Virus record (IMG/VR): IMGVR_UViG_3300042455_001086
Coordinates: 186,001 to 250,000 of that record
Reading direction: 5' to 3' (one strand)
Length of the DNA stretch: 64,000 nucleotides
This document shows, piece by piece, positions 39,231 through 55,504 of the stretch. Below the pieces are notes generated by a model, which saw only the letters and a list, made by a program, of their open reading frames with translations, did not search any database and had not been told where the DNA came from. A program made the translations under genes and the position numbers. Each line of letters begins with the position of its first letter. The first letter of the stretch is position 1.

Positions 39231-40814
39231 TTAATCAATAGTTAATTCCCAACGAATATTTCCACAATCATATATCCTATAAATTTTTCTATCAAACATA
39301 ATTTGTTTTTCTGTTTTATCTTTATCATAACCCTCTTTCACCAGATTTGATTTATTAAAATTAAATCTATAATGTCTTTTATCACCAATTACATACCAAT
39401 AATTTGGTTTTGATTGTGAAATCATTTTAAAATTTAATTTCTCATACATTTTACCGTCAAAAATTCTAACATCAGAATATGATATTAACTTTTCTGGTTT
39501 ATATGTTGAAACAAAAGACTTTAATAATTTCGATGCCGATCCAATAACATTTGTGTTTATCTTATTACAAAATCTATTTAATTCCCATTCATCTTTTTTT
39601 CCTCCCATAATAATTCTACCTCTTGAAAATGTCATAAGTGATATTAATTCATCATTATGATATAGTCCTAGTTTTACACTTGAATTAACATTTCCCTGGA
39701 TGTGGTTTTCATCTAAAAACTTTTTAGATTCTGGTGTTGATACTTCTTTTATAATACACTTTCTAGCATATATCTTATTTTCACTAATGTTAAGTTTATT
39801 TTTTATAATTGATTTTACAATCTCTTTTTTATATATCCATTCGTCTTCAAAAATATGAACTAAACCAATTCCAAGATTATTACATTTAATCGTCTTTTCC
39901 AAATGATAATTTGGTGATTTAAATAATTCATTATGCCAATATAGACCATTGAACTCAAACCCCATTTTATACTCCGGAATAAATAAATCGACTTCAGCTT
40001 TTGAATTAGGTAATTTATAATTTGTTATGTGTGTGATATTAATCTCGGTTAAAAACTTGGAAATTTCTTCTTCATAACCACTCCTCTGACTAAAACCAAG
40101 CGGGTTACAATTTAAACAACATTCATAATTTCTTTTATGTCGTTCATACAGTAATTGTTTGGGAAGTTCGGATTCATTTTTACAAGTCGGACAAAAAATA
40201 ATAACCGAACCTTTTTTAACTTCCTTAAAACTAATATCTGGATATAAATTTTTAAAATCATTAATTAGTTTGTTTTTGTAATTATTTGATTTTGCATAAT
40301 TATCAACCCCATATTTTAACTCACAAGTTCTTTTTTGTTTATCAACATTATTGTAACTACTATTACCATAATTTATTTCTTTGGTTTTTTTACCCTTTTC
40401 AATATTATTGTAATTTTCATTACCGTATTTTTTTAATTTGGTTTCTTTTTGTTTTTTTATGAAATCATTATGTTGAGTGTAGAAATCAACACCATACTTT
40501 TTATTGAAAGTTTTCTTTTGTCTATTAATTAATTCGTCCTTTGAATTATTTGCACAAGTTAAGGAACAGAAATCACCGTATGGTTTATCAAATCTATTTC
40601 TAAATTTTATTTCATTGCCGCAAGATACGCATTTTGGTCTTTGTGTTAAATTATGAAAATAAAAATATATTTTTTCTTTAAAGGTTATATTGTCTTGGAT
40701 ATTTTTTGAATATTCAACTATTTTTGAATATAATTCTGGTTCATTATTATTTAACCATTTTTCATTGGTTTTATAACCAGATTTATTATTAGTTGTAAAA
40801 AAAGAAAAATCCAT
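39231..40814 (-). CDS. Hef-like free-standing endonuclease: Zn-finger, KYG repeats, Vsr/PD-(D/E)XK nuclease, Mom-like GNAT domain (copy 1)
   Basis: CxxC pairs, KKYGVD, EVDLFIPEYKMGFEFNGLYWH...HIFEDEW, then IYARKC...FLDENHIQG...ELNRFC...SASKLL...SYSD...IYDCG. Confidence 0.75.
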   Translation of the reverse strand: MDFSFFTTNNKSGYKTNEKWLNNNEPELYSKIVEYSKNIQDNITFKEKIYFYFHNLTQRPKCVSCGNEIKFRNRFDKPYGDFCSLTCANNSKDELINRQKKTFNKKYGVDFYTQHNDFIKKQKETKLKKYGNENYNNIEKGKKTKEINYGNSSYNNVDKQKRTCELKYGVDNYAKSNNYKNKLINDFKNLYPDISFKEVKKGSVIIFCPTCKNESELPKQLLYERHKRNYECCLNCNPLGFSQRSGYEEEISKFLTEINITHITNYKLPNSKAEVDLFIPEYKMGFEFNGLYWHNELFKSPNYHLEKTIKCNNLGIGLVHIFEDEWIYKKEIVKSIIKNKLNISENKIYARKCIIKEVSTPESKKFLDENHIQGNVNSSVKLGLYHNDELISLMTFSRGRIIMGGKKDEWELNRFCNKINTNVIGSASKLLKSFVSTYKPEKLISYSDVRIFDGKMYEKLNFKMISQSKPNYWYVIGDKRHYRFNFNKSNLVKEGYDKDKTEKQIMFDRKIYRIYDCGNIRWELTID

Positions 40815-50357: not shown

Positions 50358-50875
50358 TTATAATCCTCTAAATTCGTTAGGTCCAACTGGTGCGGCAATA
50401 ATAGTTCTATAAAATGGACGGTAACCTTTATATGTGTGTTTTATATCAGATGTAACACGACCATCATTCACAACCGTGTAGTATCGAACAAAACTTTCTG
50501 TATCATAATACCCAATATAATCTCCAAAATCGATATCAACATCTAAATCTTCGAGAGTTTTTAAATAAACAGACATTGTAATATTTCCAGGTTCAAGTTG
50601 GTCCATTTTGGTTGATCCCATAAATTTATTTTCAGGTGTCGCAATTCCAACATAAGCGTTAAATTCAACTGGAGGTAAAAATTTAATACCATCTGAAACT
50701 GTTTCACCATAAACATCATCGGTTTTGGTTTTGTTTTTATCGACACGATATAAAACACAGGTATAGTTCATATCACCGATTAACCATTCCATCCCAAGGC
50801 CCACCTCTAAAAAAAAAAATCTTCTTCTCCGAAGAACTTACCAAGCCTTGTTATGGGCACTCTATTATTTGACAT
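50358..50875 (-). CDS. Head closure/neck protein (gp14-like), frame broken by a T11 run
   Basis: ATG 50875 gives MSNNRVPITRLGKFFGEEDFFF*. The downstream frame LEVGLGMEWL...VLYRVD...DDVYGE...FLPPVE joins it only with T9 or T12. Confidence 0.6.
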
Positions 50876-51564
50876 ATAAGTTATGTTTTTTTACAAATTT
50901 AAATATAATTTTATTACTACATCCATAAATATTACCTATCTGAACATAGTTTAGTCCATTTATTAAATGGTTTTTTATTTCATCAACCACTAAATTATAA
51001 ATATTAGATTTTGGTTTATATATTTCATATTGTCTTAAATTTTTATTAATTGTGTTTATAGCACAATTAAATAAATTACTAATTTCTTTTATAGTTTTAT
51101 TTTTTATAATATGTGAACTACCCAACCACTAAAGATGGTTGGGCTTCAGGACTCGTAGACTCACCTAATGGTAACGCCTCCTCCTGTTTTTGTTTAATGT
51201 CCGATTCTATTCTATAACCAGACAATATGTTTATTCCTTGTTTCAGGATGTTTTTACCTAATATTGGATTTATATTACCACCATCAGCAAGGTTAAATAA
51301 ATCAAAATTTAATTGTCTATATTTTGAAATTTCGTCTATTTCAGCTTGTAATAAATCATCATATGATTTACATTCTTTTATTTGTCTAATTATTGGTCTT
51401 TTATTTTCATTTTTTAAATCATTAAACCAAGATGCGATAAATTGATTTGTTGGTGATTTTAAATGACCGTTTAATCTTCTTTGTAGTCCATTTTTTGTTA
51501 TACCAATATACTTTAATTCGTTAGTGTCTGGACAAAATAAACCATATAATTCAAACCTATTCAT
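50865..51564 (-). pseudogene. GIY-YIG homing endonuclease disrupted by an IS200/IS605 remnant
   Basis: N-terminal LYGL...KYIGIT...RRLNGH...AEIDEI...FNLADGG (GIY-YIG). The C-terminal tandem HTH-like part (KTIKEISNLFNC..., LNYVQIGNIYGCS...) is a separate ORF after the insertion. Confidence 0.75.
51113..51255 (-). mobile_element. tnpB: IS200/IS605 (IS1341-like) remnant: tnpB 3' end, omega-RNA-like scaffold and right end
   Basis: KNILKQGINILSG...EAQPSLVVG* resembles the TnpB tail after the NAAxNI motif. Subterminal hairpin CCCAACCA-TCTTTAG-TGGTTGGG is followed by TAGTTCAC. GC content is higher than the flanks. Confidence 0.75.
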
Positions 51565-51612
51565 TATTGATAAATATCATTTTATGATTATTTTTATTTA
51601 TATCTTGGAATT

Positions 51613-53373
51613 TTGGAAATACAAAAAAAACTGATAGAACATAAAGCCCTTGATTTATTGGACTCATATAGTGGGGCCAATAACCATATTCTATATATGA
51701 AGACCAAAAAAGAAACTAATAAAAAGTTTTATCCAACAAGAACTCAAGCCGAATATGTTGTAACTTATTTTGATACAAAACCAAAGGTTGCAAGAAAGTG
51801 GGTTGAACTGGATCCATACTTTGCAAAGAAGTTTGCACAAGAAAGATATTTGTTTGAAACGCCAGAAAAAGTCTATATTGAAAAGCTACTTGTTGAAAAA
51901 GATAAATCATATCATATCTGGGGTAAATTTTTTGAAAAAGACAGTTTGTCCGAATTTTGGGTGCCCAAGTCGTCCCTTATTAAATCACAAACGGTAGATG
52001 ATATTGTTATTGATTATTCTAAATACGAACATAGACCTCCACTATCACACCAGAAAGAAGCAATAGAAAAACTTACAAAATCTAGAAGATTTATTTTAGC
52101 TGATGACATGGGCGTCGGAAAGACATGTTCCACAATTATCGCAGCACTTGAGACCAACACAAAAAAAATTTTGGTAGTTTGTCCTGCGTCACTTAAAATA
52201 AATTGGCAACGAGAATTTAACATATATACCAATCGTAGTATTTTTATTGCTGAAGGAAAAAAATTCTCAACGGAACACGATATTGTAATTGTTAATTATG
52301 ATATTTTAAAGAACTTTTATGATATTAAAAACCCAAGTGATTCGCCAATTGGTCAAACTAACTTTGATTTAATCATATTGGATGAAGCTCATATGGTAAG
52401 TAATAGTCAAGCTGCTAGAACAAAAATAATTAATAGTTTTACAAAAAAAGCCAAATATTTGTGGTTATTAACGGGAACACCAATGACAAACAGACCAATC
52501 AACTATTATAATTTATTAAATTTGATTGAAAGTCCGGTTGCACAAAACTGGATGGCGTATGCTATTCGTTATTGTCAAGGATTTCAGTTTAGAGCTGGCA
52601 ATCGAAAAATATGGAATGTAACCGGAGCATCAAATCTGGAAGAATTAAGAGAAAGAACATCAAAACAAATTTTAAGAAGATTAAAAGAAGATGTTTTGGA
52701 TTTACCGGATAAGATTATTACACCCGTATATTTAAGAACATCATCAAAAGAATATAAAGATTTAATGGGTGAATATTATGAATGGTTAGAAAATAAAAAA
52801 GAAGAATCCTCTTCTCTTACCGTTCAGTTCTCAAAACTTATGAAAGTAAGAAAAGTAATTGCAAATGAAAAAGTAAAAGAAACAATTGAATTTGCTCAAA
52901 ATATTATAGACCAAGGAAAAAAAGTAATAATATTTACAAACTTCACAGATACACTTCAACTTATCCATAATCATTTTGGTAAAGAATCGGTATATCTTGA
53001 TGGTAGTTGTAATAAAGTCCAAAGACAATACGCTGTAGATCAATTCCAAGAAAATGAAAAAATTAAAGTGTTTGTTGGAAACTTAAAAGCCGCCGGTGTT
53101 GGACTTACATTAACTTCAGCCGAAGTTGTAATAATGAACGATTTATCATTTGTTCCCGCAGAACACGCACAAGCTGAAGATAGGGCATATCGTTACGGTC
53201 AAAAAAATAATGTATTAGTTTATTACCCAGTGTTTATTAATACAATTGAAGGTACGATATATGATATTCTAAATAAAAAGAAAAAAATTATCGGAACCGT
53301 AATGGGTGATGAGGTCCAAGATACTGGTGATGTTGTGGAAGAAATTTTGAATCTTATAAATAAAAGACCTTAA
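51613..53373 (+). CDS. SNF2-family (HARP/SMARCAL1-like) helicase
   Basis: LADDMGVGKT, VVCPASLKINW, ILDEAH, LTGTP, AAGVGLTLT, QAEDRAYRYGQ. Confidence 0.92.
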   Translation: MEIQKKLIEHKALDLLDSYSGANNHILYMKTKKETNKKFYPTRTQAEYVVTYFDTKPKVARKWVELDPYFAKKFAQERYLFETPEKVYIEKLLVEKDKSYHIWGKFFEKDSLSEFWVPKSSLIKSQTVDDIVIDYSKYEHRPPLSHQKEAIEKLTKSRRFILADDMGVGKTCSTIIAALETNTKKILVVCPASLKINWQREFNIYTNRSIFIAEGKKFSTEHDIVIVNYDILKNFYDIKNPSDSPIGQTNFDLIILDEAHMVSNSQAARTKIINSFTKKAKYLWLLTGTPMTNRPINYYNLLNLIESPVAQNWMAYAIRYCQGFQFRAGNRKIWNVTGASNLEELRERTSKQILRRLKEDVLDLPDKIITPVYLRTSSKEYKDLMGEYYEWLENKKEESSSLTVQFSKLMKVRKVIANEKVKETIEFAQNIIDQGKKVIIFTNFTDTLQLIHNHFGKESVYLDGSCNKVQRQYAVDQFQENEKIKVFVGNLKAAGVGLTLTSAEVVIMNDLSFVPAEHAQAEDRAYRYGQKNNVLVYYPVFINTIEGTIYDILNKKKKIIGTVMGDEVQDTGDVVEEILNLINKRP

Positions 53374-53404: not shown

Positions 53405-55504
53405 ATGAAACTTACTGTAAAACATATTGATTCTGGTCTTGACCCACAAGACAAGAAAATGTATAACGATTTTATTAAATTTATAAATTCAAAATATCCA
53501 GTCAATAAAGAACTCGAAATTTTATTTCTTGGTGAGAAAAATGGACATATGTCCACTGGGTCTCAAAATATGAACGGAGTTATTAAAGTCTTATCCAAAA
53601 ATAGATTGAACCGTGATATAATGAGAACTCTAGCACACGAATGGGTTCATGCGCATCAAAGATTTGTTTTAGGTAGAGAAAGAGGTCCGGACATTGGTGG
53701 TCAAAATGAAGATGAAGCAAATGCTTTCGCTGGACAATTAATTAAAATGTTTGAAAAAGAATATCCAGACTATAATGAACTTGTTTTTGAACATTCAAAA
53801 CCATTAATAAAAAAACTTGATCTTTTAAAAGAAGAAATTCTTAAAACAGAAAAACAAAATTTACATAAAGAATTTATTACTGAAATGAAAAAAATTGGTA
53901 TTGAAAAATTACCATATTCATATTCGGCTATGAAACAATTTGTTGATCCTAAAACAATGGACATTCATTACAACAAACATTATAAAGGTTATGTTAAAAA
54001 ATTAAACGCCGCATTATCAAACAAAAAAGGTGAAATGGAACTTGAGGATATTGTTAAGTCCATATCAAAATTTGACACAAAAGTAAGAAACAATGCTGGT
54101 GGGGCTTTTAACCATGCTTTATTTTGGAAAATGTTGTCACCAAAAAAACAAAAACCAAGCAAATCAATTTTAGAAAAAATTAAAAAAGATTTTGGAAATT
54201 TAAAAAAATTAAAAGATGAATTTAATTTAATTGCCAAAGATGGTTTTGGTTCTGGTTGGGCTTGGTTAATTCTTACAAAAAATAATAAATTAAAAATAAC
54301 TTTTACACCAAACCAAGATAATCCATTGATGGATGTTGTCAAAGGTGGTGGTTTTCCGTTACTAGGACTTGATCTTTGGGAACATGCTTATTATTTAAAA
54401 TATCAAAACAAAAGAGACGAATATATAAATAATTTTTGGAACTATATAAATTGGGATTTTGTTAATGATTTATATGAAACGAAATCAAAAAAGAAATTAA
54501 ACGAATCATTAAGAAAAATTATTGTTGAAAATGATACTATGGATTATGATTTAAAAAAGGCAATGAGTCGTGAATTACAAAAAATCAGACTTATACCCTT
54601 GGATGCCGAATCCGCATCAGAAGCAATTAAAAACATCATAACTGCCGAAACTTCAAGAGGTAATATTGATTTTAATAGAACACTTGAAGGTCTTATGTCG
54701 CTTAATTTGAGTAATGTATCAGAAAGATCAAAATATAGATTTAATAATTATTTTCAAAGATTTGTAAAAAGTAAGTCAAGAGGTCTTGATTTTGAAGGTA
54801 TGGTGGCCGGATTTTTAAATGGTGATCTAGCAACAAGTAATGTTTCACCATTCGATGTCTCAACACCAGCTGGTGATAAAATTTCTTGTAAAATCGTTAG
54901 AAGTCAAAAAGAACGAATAACACTTAAAAGTATTAAAGAAACATTGGGTCAATATTTAGCCAACTATTCTGGTTCTGAAGAAAACAAACAAGAATTGTTA
55001 AAGATGAGCCAACAACCAAATTTTCTTAGATTATTGGTAAATCACGAAAATCAAGATTTGAAAAATCAAGCCGAAGATATATTGGAATTTTTACTTACAG
55101 ACATCACCGGGTTGTTGGTTGGTATCCCAAATGAAACAAAAGTTGGAATTGATTTATATTATTATGATAAAAATAAAATTATTGATCTTGTTAAAACACC
55201 TGGGTTATTAAATGCCGGAAGATCACCAGAAGCACAAACAATATCATTATCAACAAAAATACTTAGTGGTGATAAAACTATGTCTGGATTTATTCAGTTT
55301 CCAGTTTTAACAATGGATGATTATCAATCTTTTTTAATTGGTGATGAAAAAACAAAAGAAGTTTTAAATTTATTTAATCAACTTGGAAACAAATACGGTG
55401 TTCCAAGACTTGGAGACAATTTACCACAAGACATTATTATAGGTTTATCTAAAAATGAAAGATTCAAGTTAGATCTTAAAAAATTGGTAAATCCAATAAG
55501 GTAA
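53405..55504 (+). CDS. Fusion protein: zincin HExxH domain + Fe/Mn superoxide dismutase + putative PD-(D/E)XK nuclease
   Basis: RTLAHEWVH...EDEANA; LPYSY...IHYNKH...NHALFW...FGSGWAWL...NQDNP...GLDLWEHAYY; RGLDFEGMVAGFLNG...PFDV...KISCK. Confidence 0.8.
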   Translation: MKLTVKHIDSGLDPQDKKMYNDFIKFINSKYPVNKELEILFLGEKNGHMSTGSQNMNGVIKVLSKNRLNRDIMRTLAHEWVHAHQRFVLGRERGPDIGGQNEDEANAFAGQLIKMFEKEYPDYNELVFEHSKPLIKKLDLLKEEILKTEKQNLHKEFITEMKKIGIEKLPYSYSAMKQFVDPKTMDIHYNKHYKGYVKKLNAALSNKKGEMELEDIVKSISKFDTKVRNNAGGAFNHALFWKMLSPKKQKPSKSILEKIKKDFGNLKKLKDEFNLIAKDGFGSGWAWLILTKNNKLKITFTPNQDNPLMDVVKGGGFPLLGLDLWEHAYYLKYQNKRDEYINNFWNYINWDFVNDLYETKSKKKLNESLRKIIVENDTMDYDLKKAMSRELQKIRLIPLDAESASEAIKNIITAETSRGNIDFNRTLEGLMSLNLSNVSERSKYRFNNYFQRFVKSKSRGLDFEGMVAGFLNGDLATSNVSPFDVSTPAGDKISCKIVRSQKERITLKSIKETLGQYLANYSGSEENKQELLKMSQQPNFLRLLVNHENQDLKNQAEDILEFLLTDITGLLVGIPNETKVGIDLYYYDKNKIIDLVKTPGLLNAGRSPEAQTISLSTKILSGDKTMSGFIQFPVLTMDDYQSFLIGDEKTKEVLNLFNQLGNKYGVPRLGDNLPQDIIIGLSKNERFKLDLKKLVNPIR

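What the first reader, a model, noticed from the sequence alone, without database searches (positions are those of the whole stretch)
51090..51564. Orphan TnpB omega-RNA-like scaffold fused in frame to a GIY-YIG nuclease domain
Seen: after about 100 aa of GIY-YIG (...DGGNINPILGK) the ORF continues into a TnpB-like tail (NILKQG...EAQPSLVVG*). The 143-nt insert has nested hairpins (CAGGA...TCCTG around AGGCGTTACC-ATTA-GGTGAGTCT; CCCAACCA/TGGTTGGG) and ends TTCAC, after which the endonuclease HTH region resumes (ATATTATAAAAAATAAAAC). No left end or RuvC-coding part is visible. Known: TnpB omega-RNA derives from the last ~150-200 nt of the element and uses the flanking DNA as guide. Inference: an IS inserted into the homing endonuclease gene, and a deletion then left nearly just the RNA scaffold plus guide behind a phage promoter. 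It could load or titrate TnpB in trans, or simply be a decaying scar.
Basis: partly seen in the sequence, partly recalled or inferred. Interest (0 to 1): 0.75.

Follow-up and report, generated by a model that had tools for sequence, protein, structure and literature searches.

The report
Leftover transposon guide-RNA scar in phage gene
A lake-water jumbo phage carries a homing-endonuclease gene that was hit by an IS605-family transposon and then lost most of that transposon plus 414 bases of its own coding sequence, leaving only the ~140-base guide-RNA (omega-RNA) end. This is an ordinary kind of decay product, though neatly documented.

Summary

- **What the segment is.** Window 51113-51251 (minus strand, up to 51257) is the last ~140-145 nt of an IS200/IS605-family tnpB element. 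It is ~96% identical to the 3' ends of full-length 398-aa TnpB genes in related freshwater phage contigs. It ends at the conserved TTCAC, after which all copies diverge.
- **How it arose.** Uninterrupted alleles of the host gene exist: a ~324-aa I-TevI-like GIY-YIG endonuclease, 96-97% identical in L042. They read ...GATTTAT|ATATTTT... at the right junction, so the IS inserted 3' of a TTTAT target motif. That is the TAM/TEM pair published for ISGst2. The left junction is a GTAAAA microhomology shared by the endonuclease gene and tnpB. A deletion there removed 414 nt of the endonuclease gene, the left end and about 1.2 kb or more of the IS.
- **What survives.** The remnant keeps all four covariation-supported helices and its native guide flank. 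That flank matches the intact sibling allele with one mismatch.
- **What is missing.** The 257-kb phage genome has no TnpB or TnpA, and no RNA data exist.
- **Context.** Similar remnants of 116-711 nt are common in this phage clade.

Verdict: a decaying IS scar that could in principle act in trans. New member of a known kind, modest interest.

The parts
51118..51564 (-). Chimeric ORF (148 aa): GIY-YIG catalytic domain (aa 1-104) fused in frame to the last 44 aa of TnpB. Its stop codon TAG (51120-51118) is the tnpB stop.
51252..51564 (-). 5' fragment of the I-TevI-like GIY-YIG homing-endonuclease gene (codons 1-104), 304/313 nt identical to the intact allele L042
51252..51257 (-). Left junction: GTAAAA microhomology shared by the endonuclease gene (GGT AAA ACA CAT ACT GAA) and tnpB (AGT AAA AAC ATC CTG AAA). 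This is the deletion crossover.
   Evidence: alignment A1
51113..51251 (-). Remnant of the IS200/IS605-family element: tnpB 3' end plus right end, i.e. the omega-RNA scaffold. About 96% identical to full-length A-type copies.
51198..51224 (-). Helix 1 of the conserved scaffold (9 bp, 9-nt loop)
51147..51186 (-). Helices 2 and 3 (CAGGA...TCCTG enclosing the nested hairpin). They carry most of the compensatory changes.
51120..51144 (-). Terminal (subterminal right-end) hairpin GCCCAACCAT/GTGGTTGGGT. Its 23-mer core recurs exactly in 37 IMG/VR stretches and 5 genome contigs.
51113..51117 (-). Transposon-encoded motif TTCAC, the last bases of the element. All copies diverge immediately after it.
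51093..51112 (-). Guide-equivalent flank (first 20 nt after the right end). It is identical to the target in the intact allele L042 except for position 6, and there it is preceded by TTTAT.
50865..51112 (-). 3' fragment of the endonuclease gene (HTH DNA-binding end, codons ~243-324). It is out of frame with the 5' ORF and 238/248 nt identical to L042.

Best explanation
The segment is the decayed right end of an ISGst2-like IS200/IS605-family (tnpB-bearing) insertion sequence.

Shown:
- The IS transposed into the coding strand of a phage I-TevI-like GIY-YIG homing-endonuclease gene, immediately 3' of a TTTAT target motif lying in the conserved D-L-Y codons.
- A deletion between a short direct repeat then occurred (GTAAAA, within a ~16/18-nt similar stretch present in both the endonuclease gene and tnpB).
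- That deletion removed 414 nt of the endonuclease gene, the IS left end (and tnpA, if one was present) and all of tnpB up to just past its last RuvC motif.
- What remains is exactly the structured omega-RNA scaffold plus its native guide flank, fused in frame to the GIY-YIG domain.

Inferred:
- The endonuclease gene is dead. Its catalytic domain is cut off from its NUMOD3, Zn-finger and HTH DNA-binding parts.
- The remnant cannot move, because it has no left end.
- In this genome it is most likely an inert scar, because no TnpB is encoded.
- If a matching TnpB were supplied by a co-infecting relative or the host, the fusion transcript could be processed into a guide RNA. That RNA would direct cleavage of intact alleles (TTTAT + target).
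For: - Homology: the exact 23-mer terminal hairpin occurs in 37 IMG/VR stretches. Upstream of it, several carry full 398-404-aa ORFs. These have Pfam HTH_OrfB_IS605 + OrfB_IS605 + TNB domains, NCBIfam IS200_TnpB at 449.6 bits, and match ISDra2 TnpB in PDB at E = 2e-77.
- Remnant identity: the window remnant is 95.8-97.5% identical to the corresponding stretch of the full-length and truncated A-type copies. The tail peptide is 89% identical to TnpB aa 353-398.
- Right boundary: all copies diverge right after TTCAC (TTCAA or TTCAT in other copies).
- Empty site: intact alleles in 10 or more contigs read GATTTAT|AT... at the junction.
- Target motif: TTTAT also sits 6-7 nt before the left-end hairpin foot in six independent copies of sister subfamilies. 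It matches the published TAM TTTAT and TEM TTCAC of ISGst2.
- Left junction: microhomology, with 414 nt of the host gene lost.
- Same mechanism elsewhere: L017/L020/L075 and L082 are deletions at other microhomologies in the L015/L022/L028 context.
- Structure: 99.2% of cells are paired, and 7 pairs show compensatory change against 1.3 +/- 0.9 in shuffles.
- No partner proteins: no TnpB or TnpA elsewhere in the 257-kb genome.
- Persistence: the allele recurs unchanged in a second IMG/VR contig and in independent lake metagenomes of 2021 and 2024.
Against: - No progenitor allele with the full IS in this gene was found. The order of events is therefore inferred from the two junctions.
- The left end of the A-type subfamily itself was not defined. 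TTTAT as its target rests on sister subfamilies, the empty site and the literature.
- 'Inert scar' is an absence argument. The scaffold is structurally intact. Its 4 private substitutions break no base pair (one converts G-U to G-C) while causing 3 amino-acid changes in the former TnpB frame. This is what continued RNA-level constraint would also look like, but n = 4 is not significant.
- Other A-type copies co-occur in the same lake samples.
Confidence: 0.82

Rival explanations
1. Functional orphan guide. The remnant is retained because its RNA, cut out of the fusion transcript, loads a TnpB supplied in trans by a co-infecting relative or the host. It then directs cleavage of intact endonuclease alleles (TTTAT + target) in sibling phages. 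The cut is repaired from the remnant-bearing allele, which is immune because TTCAC replaces the TAM. This would be a gene drive for a dead gene, or a weapon in inter-phage competition.
For: - The scaffold is complete and all four helices are intact.
- The guide flank matches the L042 allele at 23 of 24 positions, with TTTAT in place.
- A relative whose flanking DNA is ~92% identical carries a full A-type tnpB plus Y1 tnpA.
- Other A-type copies are present in the same lake samples.
- The private substitutions spare base pairs.
- The allele persists across samples from 2020 to 2024.
- The literature accepts that PATE-borne omega-RNAs must use TnpB in trans.
Against: - There is no TnpB in the genome.
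- There is no RNA evidence; the runs labelled RNA are probably DNA.
- No promoter support was found.
- The single mismatch to L042 lies at guide position 6, in the TAM-proximal part. More distant alleles have 3-5 mismatches.
- RE-anchored remnants form a length continuum (116-1213 nt) rather than a sharp class, and most are 95-100% identical to full copies. This points to young, transient decay products.
Confidence: 0.12
2. The segment is a non-autonomous mini-element (PATE/MITE-like, left end + omega-RNA) that transposed into the gene as such, not a deletion remnant.
For: Such mini-elements exist in this phage clade. A ~245-nt left-end + scaffold unit lies at three different sites (L003, L011, L031). 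A ~110-nt left-end + right-end unit is seen in L005 and its identical copies.
Against: - There is no left-end hairpin or foot at the left junction.
- The junction falls inside tnpB coding sequence at a microhomology with the host gene.
- 414 nt of host gene are missing.
- It is single-copy in the genome.
Confidence: 0.03
3. The segment is a recoding or splicing device (gene-60-like translational bypass, a small intron or an IStron) that still allows a full-length endonuclease to be made.
For: It is a structured GC-rich block between two halves of one gene that lie in different frames.
Against: - 138 codons of the protein (NUMOD3 repeats, Zn finger) are absent from the DNA.
- No Rfam family, intron or tRNA match was found.
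- The block is demonstrably tnpB sequence.
Confidence: 0.01

Closest known systems
ISGst2 of Geobacillus stearothermophilus (IS200/IS605 family; TnpB2 with omega-RNA), Meers et al. 2023, bioRxiv 10.1101/2023.03.14.532601
   Same: - It has the same transposon-adjacent motif TTTAT and the same transposon-encoded motif TTCAC.
- The guide is the DNA flanking the right end.
- TnpB is a canonical IS200_TnpB.
- Protein-less derivatives carrying omega-RNAs are described there too.
   Different: - Here the elements live in AT-rich freshwater jumbo-phage genomes.
- The window copy lacks TnpB, TnpA and the left end.
PATEs (palindrome-associated transposable elements) / non-autonomous IS200/IS605 derivatives
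   Same: It is a protein-less derivative retaining the right-end hairpin and the omega-RNA region. It would need TnpB, and TnpA, in trans.
   Different: PATEs keep both ends and remain mobilisable. The window copy has only the right end, so it is a solo-end remnant. True PATE-like units occur in relatives (L003, L011, L031 and the L005 type).
ISDra2 TnpB-omega-RNA (PDB 8BF8/8EXA/8H1J)
   Same: The full-length relatives' TnpB matches it at E = 2e-77 over aa 4-361. The organisation is the same, with the omega-RNA scaffold overlapping the tnpB 3' end.
   Different: The TAM differs (TTGAT in ISDra2, from my own knowledge). Scaffold sequences are not alignable. No Rfam model exists to test RNA-family membership.
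I-TevI / Seg-type free-standing GIY-YIG homing endonucleases of phages
   Same: Intact alleles have GIY-YIG + 2 NUMOD3 + I-TevI-type Zn finger (weak) + C-terminal HTH. The gene is present in some related phages and absent in others.
   Different: In the window, the linker and Zn-finger part is deleted and the HTH is out of frame, so the gene is a pseudogene.

Membership tests
IS200/IS605 tnpB right end / omega-RNA region | Sequence homology to the 3' end of a bona fide tnpB gene and its right end | tested here: met
   144-145 nt at ~96% identity to full-length copies. The peptide tail is 89% identical to TnpB aa 353-398. TnpB identity is confirmed by Pfam, NCBIfam and PDB.
IS200/IS605 tnpB right end / omega-RNA region | Element ends at a conserved transposon-encoded motif, with unrelated flanks beyond it | tested here: met
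   TTCAC at 51117-51113. More than 20 different flanks follow it in other copies. This is the same TEM as ISGst2.
IS200/IS605 tnpB right end / omega-RNA region | Insertion immediately 3' of the family's target motif (TAM) in the empty site | tested here: met
   Intact alleles read GATTTAT|ATATTTT.... TTTAT precedes the left ends of sister subfamilies.
IS200/IS605 tnpB right end / omega-RNA region | Conserved RNA/DNA secondary structure with covariation | tested here: met
   34 pairs, 99.2% paired, 7 pairs with compensatory change against 1.3 +/- 0.9 in shuffles and 0-3 in slid controls.
Functional TnpB-omega-RNA system | Cognate TnpB encoded in the same genome | tested here: not met
   Only the 46-aa tail matches. 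There is no PF07282 or TnpB hit elsewhere in the 257-kb genome.
Functional TnpB-omega-RNA system | Omega-RNA is transcribed and processed | tested here: inconclusive
   No genuine RNA run holds the locus. The runs labelled RNA are probably DNA. The promoter scan is uninformative.
Functional TnpB-omega-RNA system | RNA-guided cleavage of TAM-flanked target | not testable with these tools
   Needs an interference or cleavage assay. The complex prediction was not folded and is not evidence.
PATE / MITE-like non-autonomous IS200/IS605 element | Both left and right subterminal hairpins present | tested here: not met
   The left junction lies in tnpB coding sequence at a microhomology. There is no left-end foot or hairpin.
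GIY-YIG homing endonuclease (I-TevI-like) | Catalytic GIY-YIG domain joined to the NUMOD3/Zn-finger linker and the HTH DNA-binding domain in one frame | tested here: not met
   The GIY-YIG domain is present. Codons ~105-242 are deleted and the HTH is in another frame. Intact alleles have all parts.
Group I intron / IStron / described RNA families | Match to a curated covariance model | tested here: not met
   Rfam at gathering scores gives 0 hits in the window. The permissive scan gives only chance snoRNA hits. No tRNA or tmRNA was found.

The most novel reading that the evidence does not exclude
The orphan omega-RNA is a working trans-guide. In co-infections with relatives that carry the A-type TnpB (or in a host that does), it directs cleavage of intact copies of the homing-endonuclease gene at TTTAT + target. 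It thereby drives its own broken allele through the phage population. This would be a guide-only 'hitch-hiking' gene drive aimed at another selfish element.
Probability: 0.1. Interest if true: 0.7.

Novelty: new member of a known kind. Interest (0 to 1): 0.3.

Why it matters
This is a clean natural example of the whole life cycle of an IS605/TnpB element inside a virus. All stages are documented by sibling alleles: insertion at a TTTAT site in another selfish gene, then microhomology deletion down to the guide-RNA module.

It also shows that an ISGst2-like IS family populates a clade of AT-rich freshwater jumbo phages and decays there repeatedly. That family includes copies with a Y1 TnpA, TnpB-only copies, left-end + omega-RNA mini-elements and solo right ends.

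If the leftover guide were active with TnpB in trans, it would be a guide-only drive against intact homing-endonuclease alleles. As it stands, the finding is best read as an annotated pseudogene plus an IS scar.

Tried and rejected
Alternatives considered and rejected:
- tRNA, tmRNA or a described RNA family: none found.
- Gene-60-like bypass, or an intron or IStron restoring the endonuclease: rejected, because 414 nt of coding sequence are absent.
- Mobile mini-element: rejected, because there is no left end and the unit is single-copy.
- My first impression that orphan remnants cluster sharply at the omega-RNA boundary (113-145 nt) did not hold. With metagenome copies, the RE-anchored remnant lengths form a continuum: 116, 120, 123, 131, 144, 145, 181, 211, 218, 222, 280, ~281, 292, 303, 711 and 1213 nt. 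The lower bound is partly set by where my probe lies. The skew to short remnants is real, but it does not prove selection.

Searches that led nowhere:
- GenBank phages: no DNA match, and only a weak GIY-YIG protein hit in a Flavobacterium phage.
- Exact right-junction search of metagenome contigs for a full-length progenitor: 0 hits.
- TnpB-RNA complex prediction: not folded, so it is no evidence either way.
- Sigma-70 promoter and terminator scan: below shuffle expectation.

Full report
**Setting.** The window is bases 186,001-250,000 of a 257,166-bp IMG/VR virus record with inverted terminal repeats. It is AT-rich and occurs in lake-water and freshwater metagenomes from 2020 to 2024. On the minus strand lies an ORF at 51564..51118 (148 aa), followed in a different frame by an 86-aa ORF at 51125..50865. 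The first ORF has a Pfam GIY-YIG domain over aa 7-84. The second gives weak HTH hits.

- Between the two ORF halves is a GC island, 45-47% GC against about 15-25% in the flanking endonuclease gene.
- It folds much better than shuffles (-44.5 kcal/mol, z = -4.4, 0 of 200 shuffles as good).
- It is single-copy in the genome.
- Rfam and ARAGORN find nothing.

**Identity.**
- The 23-nt terminal hairpin core occurs exactly in 37 IMG/VR stretches and 5 prokaryotic contigs: Helicobacter, a Bacteroidetes MAG and a Saccharibacteria MAG.
- When these copies are lined up, all share sequence up to ...GGGTAGTTCA(C/A/T) and are unrelated beyond it. That point is therefore an element boundary.
- Upstream, several copies carry complete 398-404-aa ORFs. 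The one in L004 has HTH_OrfB_IS605 + OrfB_IS605 + Cas12f1-like TNB domains. It passes NCBIfam IS200_TnpB (449.6 bits, cut-off 425) and matches ISDra2 TnpB structures at E = 2e-77.
- The window segment aligns to the last 144-145 nt of these 'A-type' elements at about 96% identity. The tail peptide NILKQG...QPSLVVG* is 89% identical to TnpB aa 353-398.
- The remnant begins just after the last RuvC motif (HHDRDLNAS|K), so no catalytic part survives.

**How it got there.** Intact alleles of the host gene exist in at least ten related contigs. They encode ~324-aa proteins with GIY-YIG, two NUMOD3 motifs, a weak I-TevI-type Zn finger and a C-terminal HTH. L042 is 97.1% and 96.0% identical to the window's two gene fragments. 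A three-way alignment of the window, L042 and the tnpB 3' end defines both junctions.
- *Right junction.* The intact allele reads ...GATTTAT|ATATTTTAAAAAAT... where the window reads ...GTTCAC|ATATTATAAAAAAT.... The IS therefore sits immediately 3' of TTTAT.
- *The TTTAT motif.* It is conserved in nearly all intact alleles because it lies in D-L-Y codons. The same pentamer precedes the left-end hairpin foot by 6-7 nt in six independent copies of sister subfamilies. TTTAT (TAM) and TTCAC (TEM) are exactly the pair reported for ISGst2.
- *Left junction.* The window follows the endonuclease gene up to GGTAAAA and tnpB from GTAAAAACATCC. The 6-nt GTAAAA overlap sits in a ~16/18-nt similar stretch (GKTHTE codons against SKNILK codons).
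- *What was lost.* 414 nt of the endonuclease gene (codons ~105-242) are gone, together with the left end and the rest of the IS.
- *Same mechanism elsewhere.* L017/L020/L075/L099 and L082 are deletions at other short repeats in the tnpA-tnpB context of L015/L022/L028.
- *No progenitor.* No allele with the full IS in this gene was found.

**The scaffold.**
- A-type copies plus a divergent relative give a consensus of four helices with 34 pairs.
- 99.2% of cells are paired. Seven pairs show compensatory changes, against 1.3 +/- 0.9 in shuffles and 0-3 when partners are slid.
- The window copy keeps every helix. Its four private substitutions fall in a loop, a bulge, an unpaired base and one G-U to G-C change. 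They would have caused three amino-acid changes in TnpB. This is suggestive of RNA-level constraint but not significant.

**Could it work?**
- The 20-24 nt after TTCAC, the would-be guide, match the L042 allele with one mismatch at position 6. More distant alleles have 3-5 mismatches.
- The window's own junction lacks the TAM and would be immune.
- The genome encodes no TnpB and no Y1 TnpA.
- A contig whose flanks are 92% identical to G000 46.9-48.8 kb carries a full A-type tnpB next to a divergent Y1 tnpA.
- Other A-type copies are present in the same lake samples.
- There is no RNA evidence. The candidate RNA runs are probably DNA. The promoter scan is uninformative.
- The published view is that protein-less derivatives carrying omega-RNAs must rely on TnpB in trans, so the idea is not new in kind.

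**Population context.**
- The remnant allele is identical in a second IMG/VR contig (L007/L041/L056).
- One contig from an independent 2021 freshwater study spans both junctions without a difference. Both flanks are covered exactly in a 2024 sample.
- Relatives lacking the whole endonuclease gene also seem to exist (joint 50861 to 51779). This is low-stringency evidence.
- Across IMG/VR and metagenome contigs the A-type family shows about ten full-length copies and many RE-anchored remnants of 116-1213 nt. This is a continuum skewed to short remnants, consistent with ongoing decay.
- The same genome holds two more decayed ends of a sister subfamily outside the window.

**Verdict.** This is a confirmed orphan TnpB omega-RNA scaffold, produced by IS insertion at a TTTAT site in a homing-endonuclease gene followed by a microhomology deletion. 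It is most likely an inert scar in a pseudogene (about 0.8). There is a small chance (about 0.1) that it serves as a trans-acting guide. It is a new member of a known kind.

Noticed in passing
G000 254,208-254,262 (+), outside the window: A ~55-nt minimal IS relic. It reads TTTAT, then a left-end foot (CCACCGAAAAAACC), a degenerate hairpin with the TCTTTAG loop, and TGGTTCAA. It resembles the left end of the C-type element in L002.
   Followed up: partly
G000 ~150,147-150,190 (-), outside the window: A second degenerate end of the same sister subfamily (..CATAAATCTTTAGTTCGTGAGTAGTTCAA), with no TnpB nearby.
   Followed up: partly
L003:2600-2847, L011:2850-3091, L031:3070-3312: A ~245-nt protein-less mini-element lies at three different sites. 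It consists of TTTAT, a left-end hairpin and a complete B-type omega-RNA scaffold ending in TTCAA. It is a mobilised PATE/MITE-like derivative.
   Followed up: partly
L005, L006, L012-L014, L016, L023, L032 (same locus in many samples): A ~110-nt unit of a left-end hairpin plus the last ~70 nt of a C-type right end, ending in TTCAC directly before an ATG. It is identical in at least 8 contigs.
   Followed up: no
L102:172-1869 (G001:12963-14651): In a close relative of this phage, the A-type tnpB sits next to a divergently oriented Y1 (IS200-type) tnpA (149 aa, 113-115 bits). This gives an IS605-like layout. Other A-type copies (L034, L004) lack tnpA.
   Followed up: partly
L025:4992-6136 (-): The contig that holds a 123-nt A-type orphan also carries a full-length tnpB only ~64% identical at DNA level, ending ...SEAQPIGSAVGG*. 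It is a possible trans partner of a different subfamily.
   Followed up: no
G000 53,532-53,614; 117,021-117,087; 117,419-117,500; 40,127-40,207; 80,735-80,899 (outside the window): A repeated ~80-nt element of the phage genome. It also occurs in several related contigs, in the wider neighbourhood of (not adjacent to) their IS copies.
   Followed up: no
window 50809-50837 (-): A terminator-like hairpin (TTCTTC-GGA-GAAGAA) followed by a run of 11 T, just downstream of the broken endonuclease gene. The consensus scan missed it because the stem has few G-C pairs.
   Followed up: no
window 50861/51779: Contigs from two lake samples join 50861 to 51779. This suggests related phages that lack the whole endonuclease gene and differ at the start of the SNF2 helicase gene. 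The likeness threshold was low and the anchors short.
   Followed up: no
L043:637-1600: Another allele of the same endonuclease gene is broken by frameshifts and stops, with no IS involved. This is an independent decay of the homing-endonuclease gene.
   Followed up: no
window 53405-55504 (+): A 699-aa ORF whose middle part reads like an Fe/Mn superoxide dismutase (..HYNKHYKGYVKKLN.., ..DLWEHAYYL..), embedded in a larger protein. I judged this by eye and ran no domain search on it.
   Followed up: no
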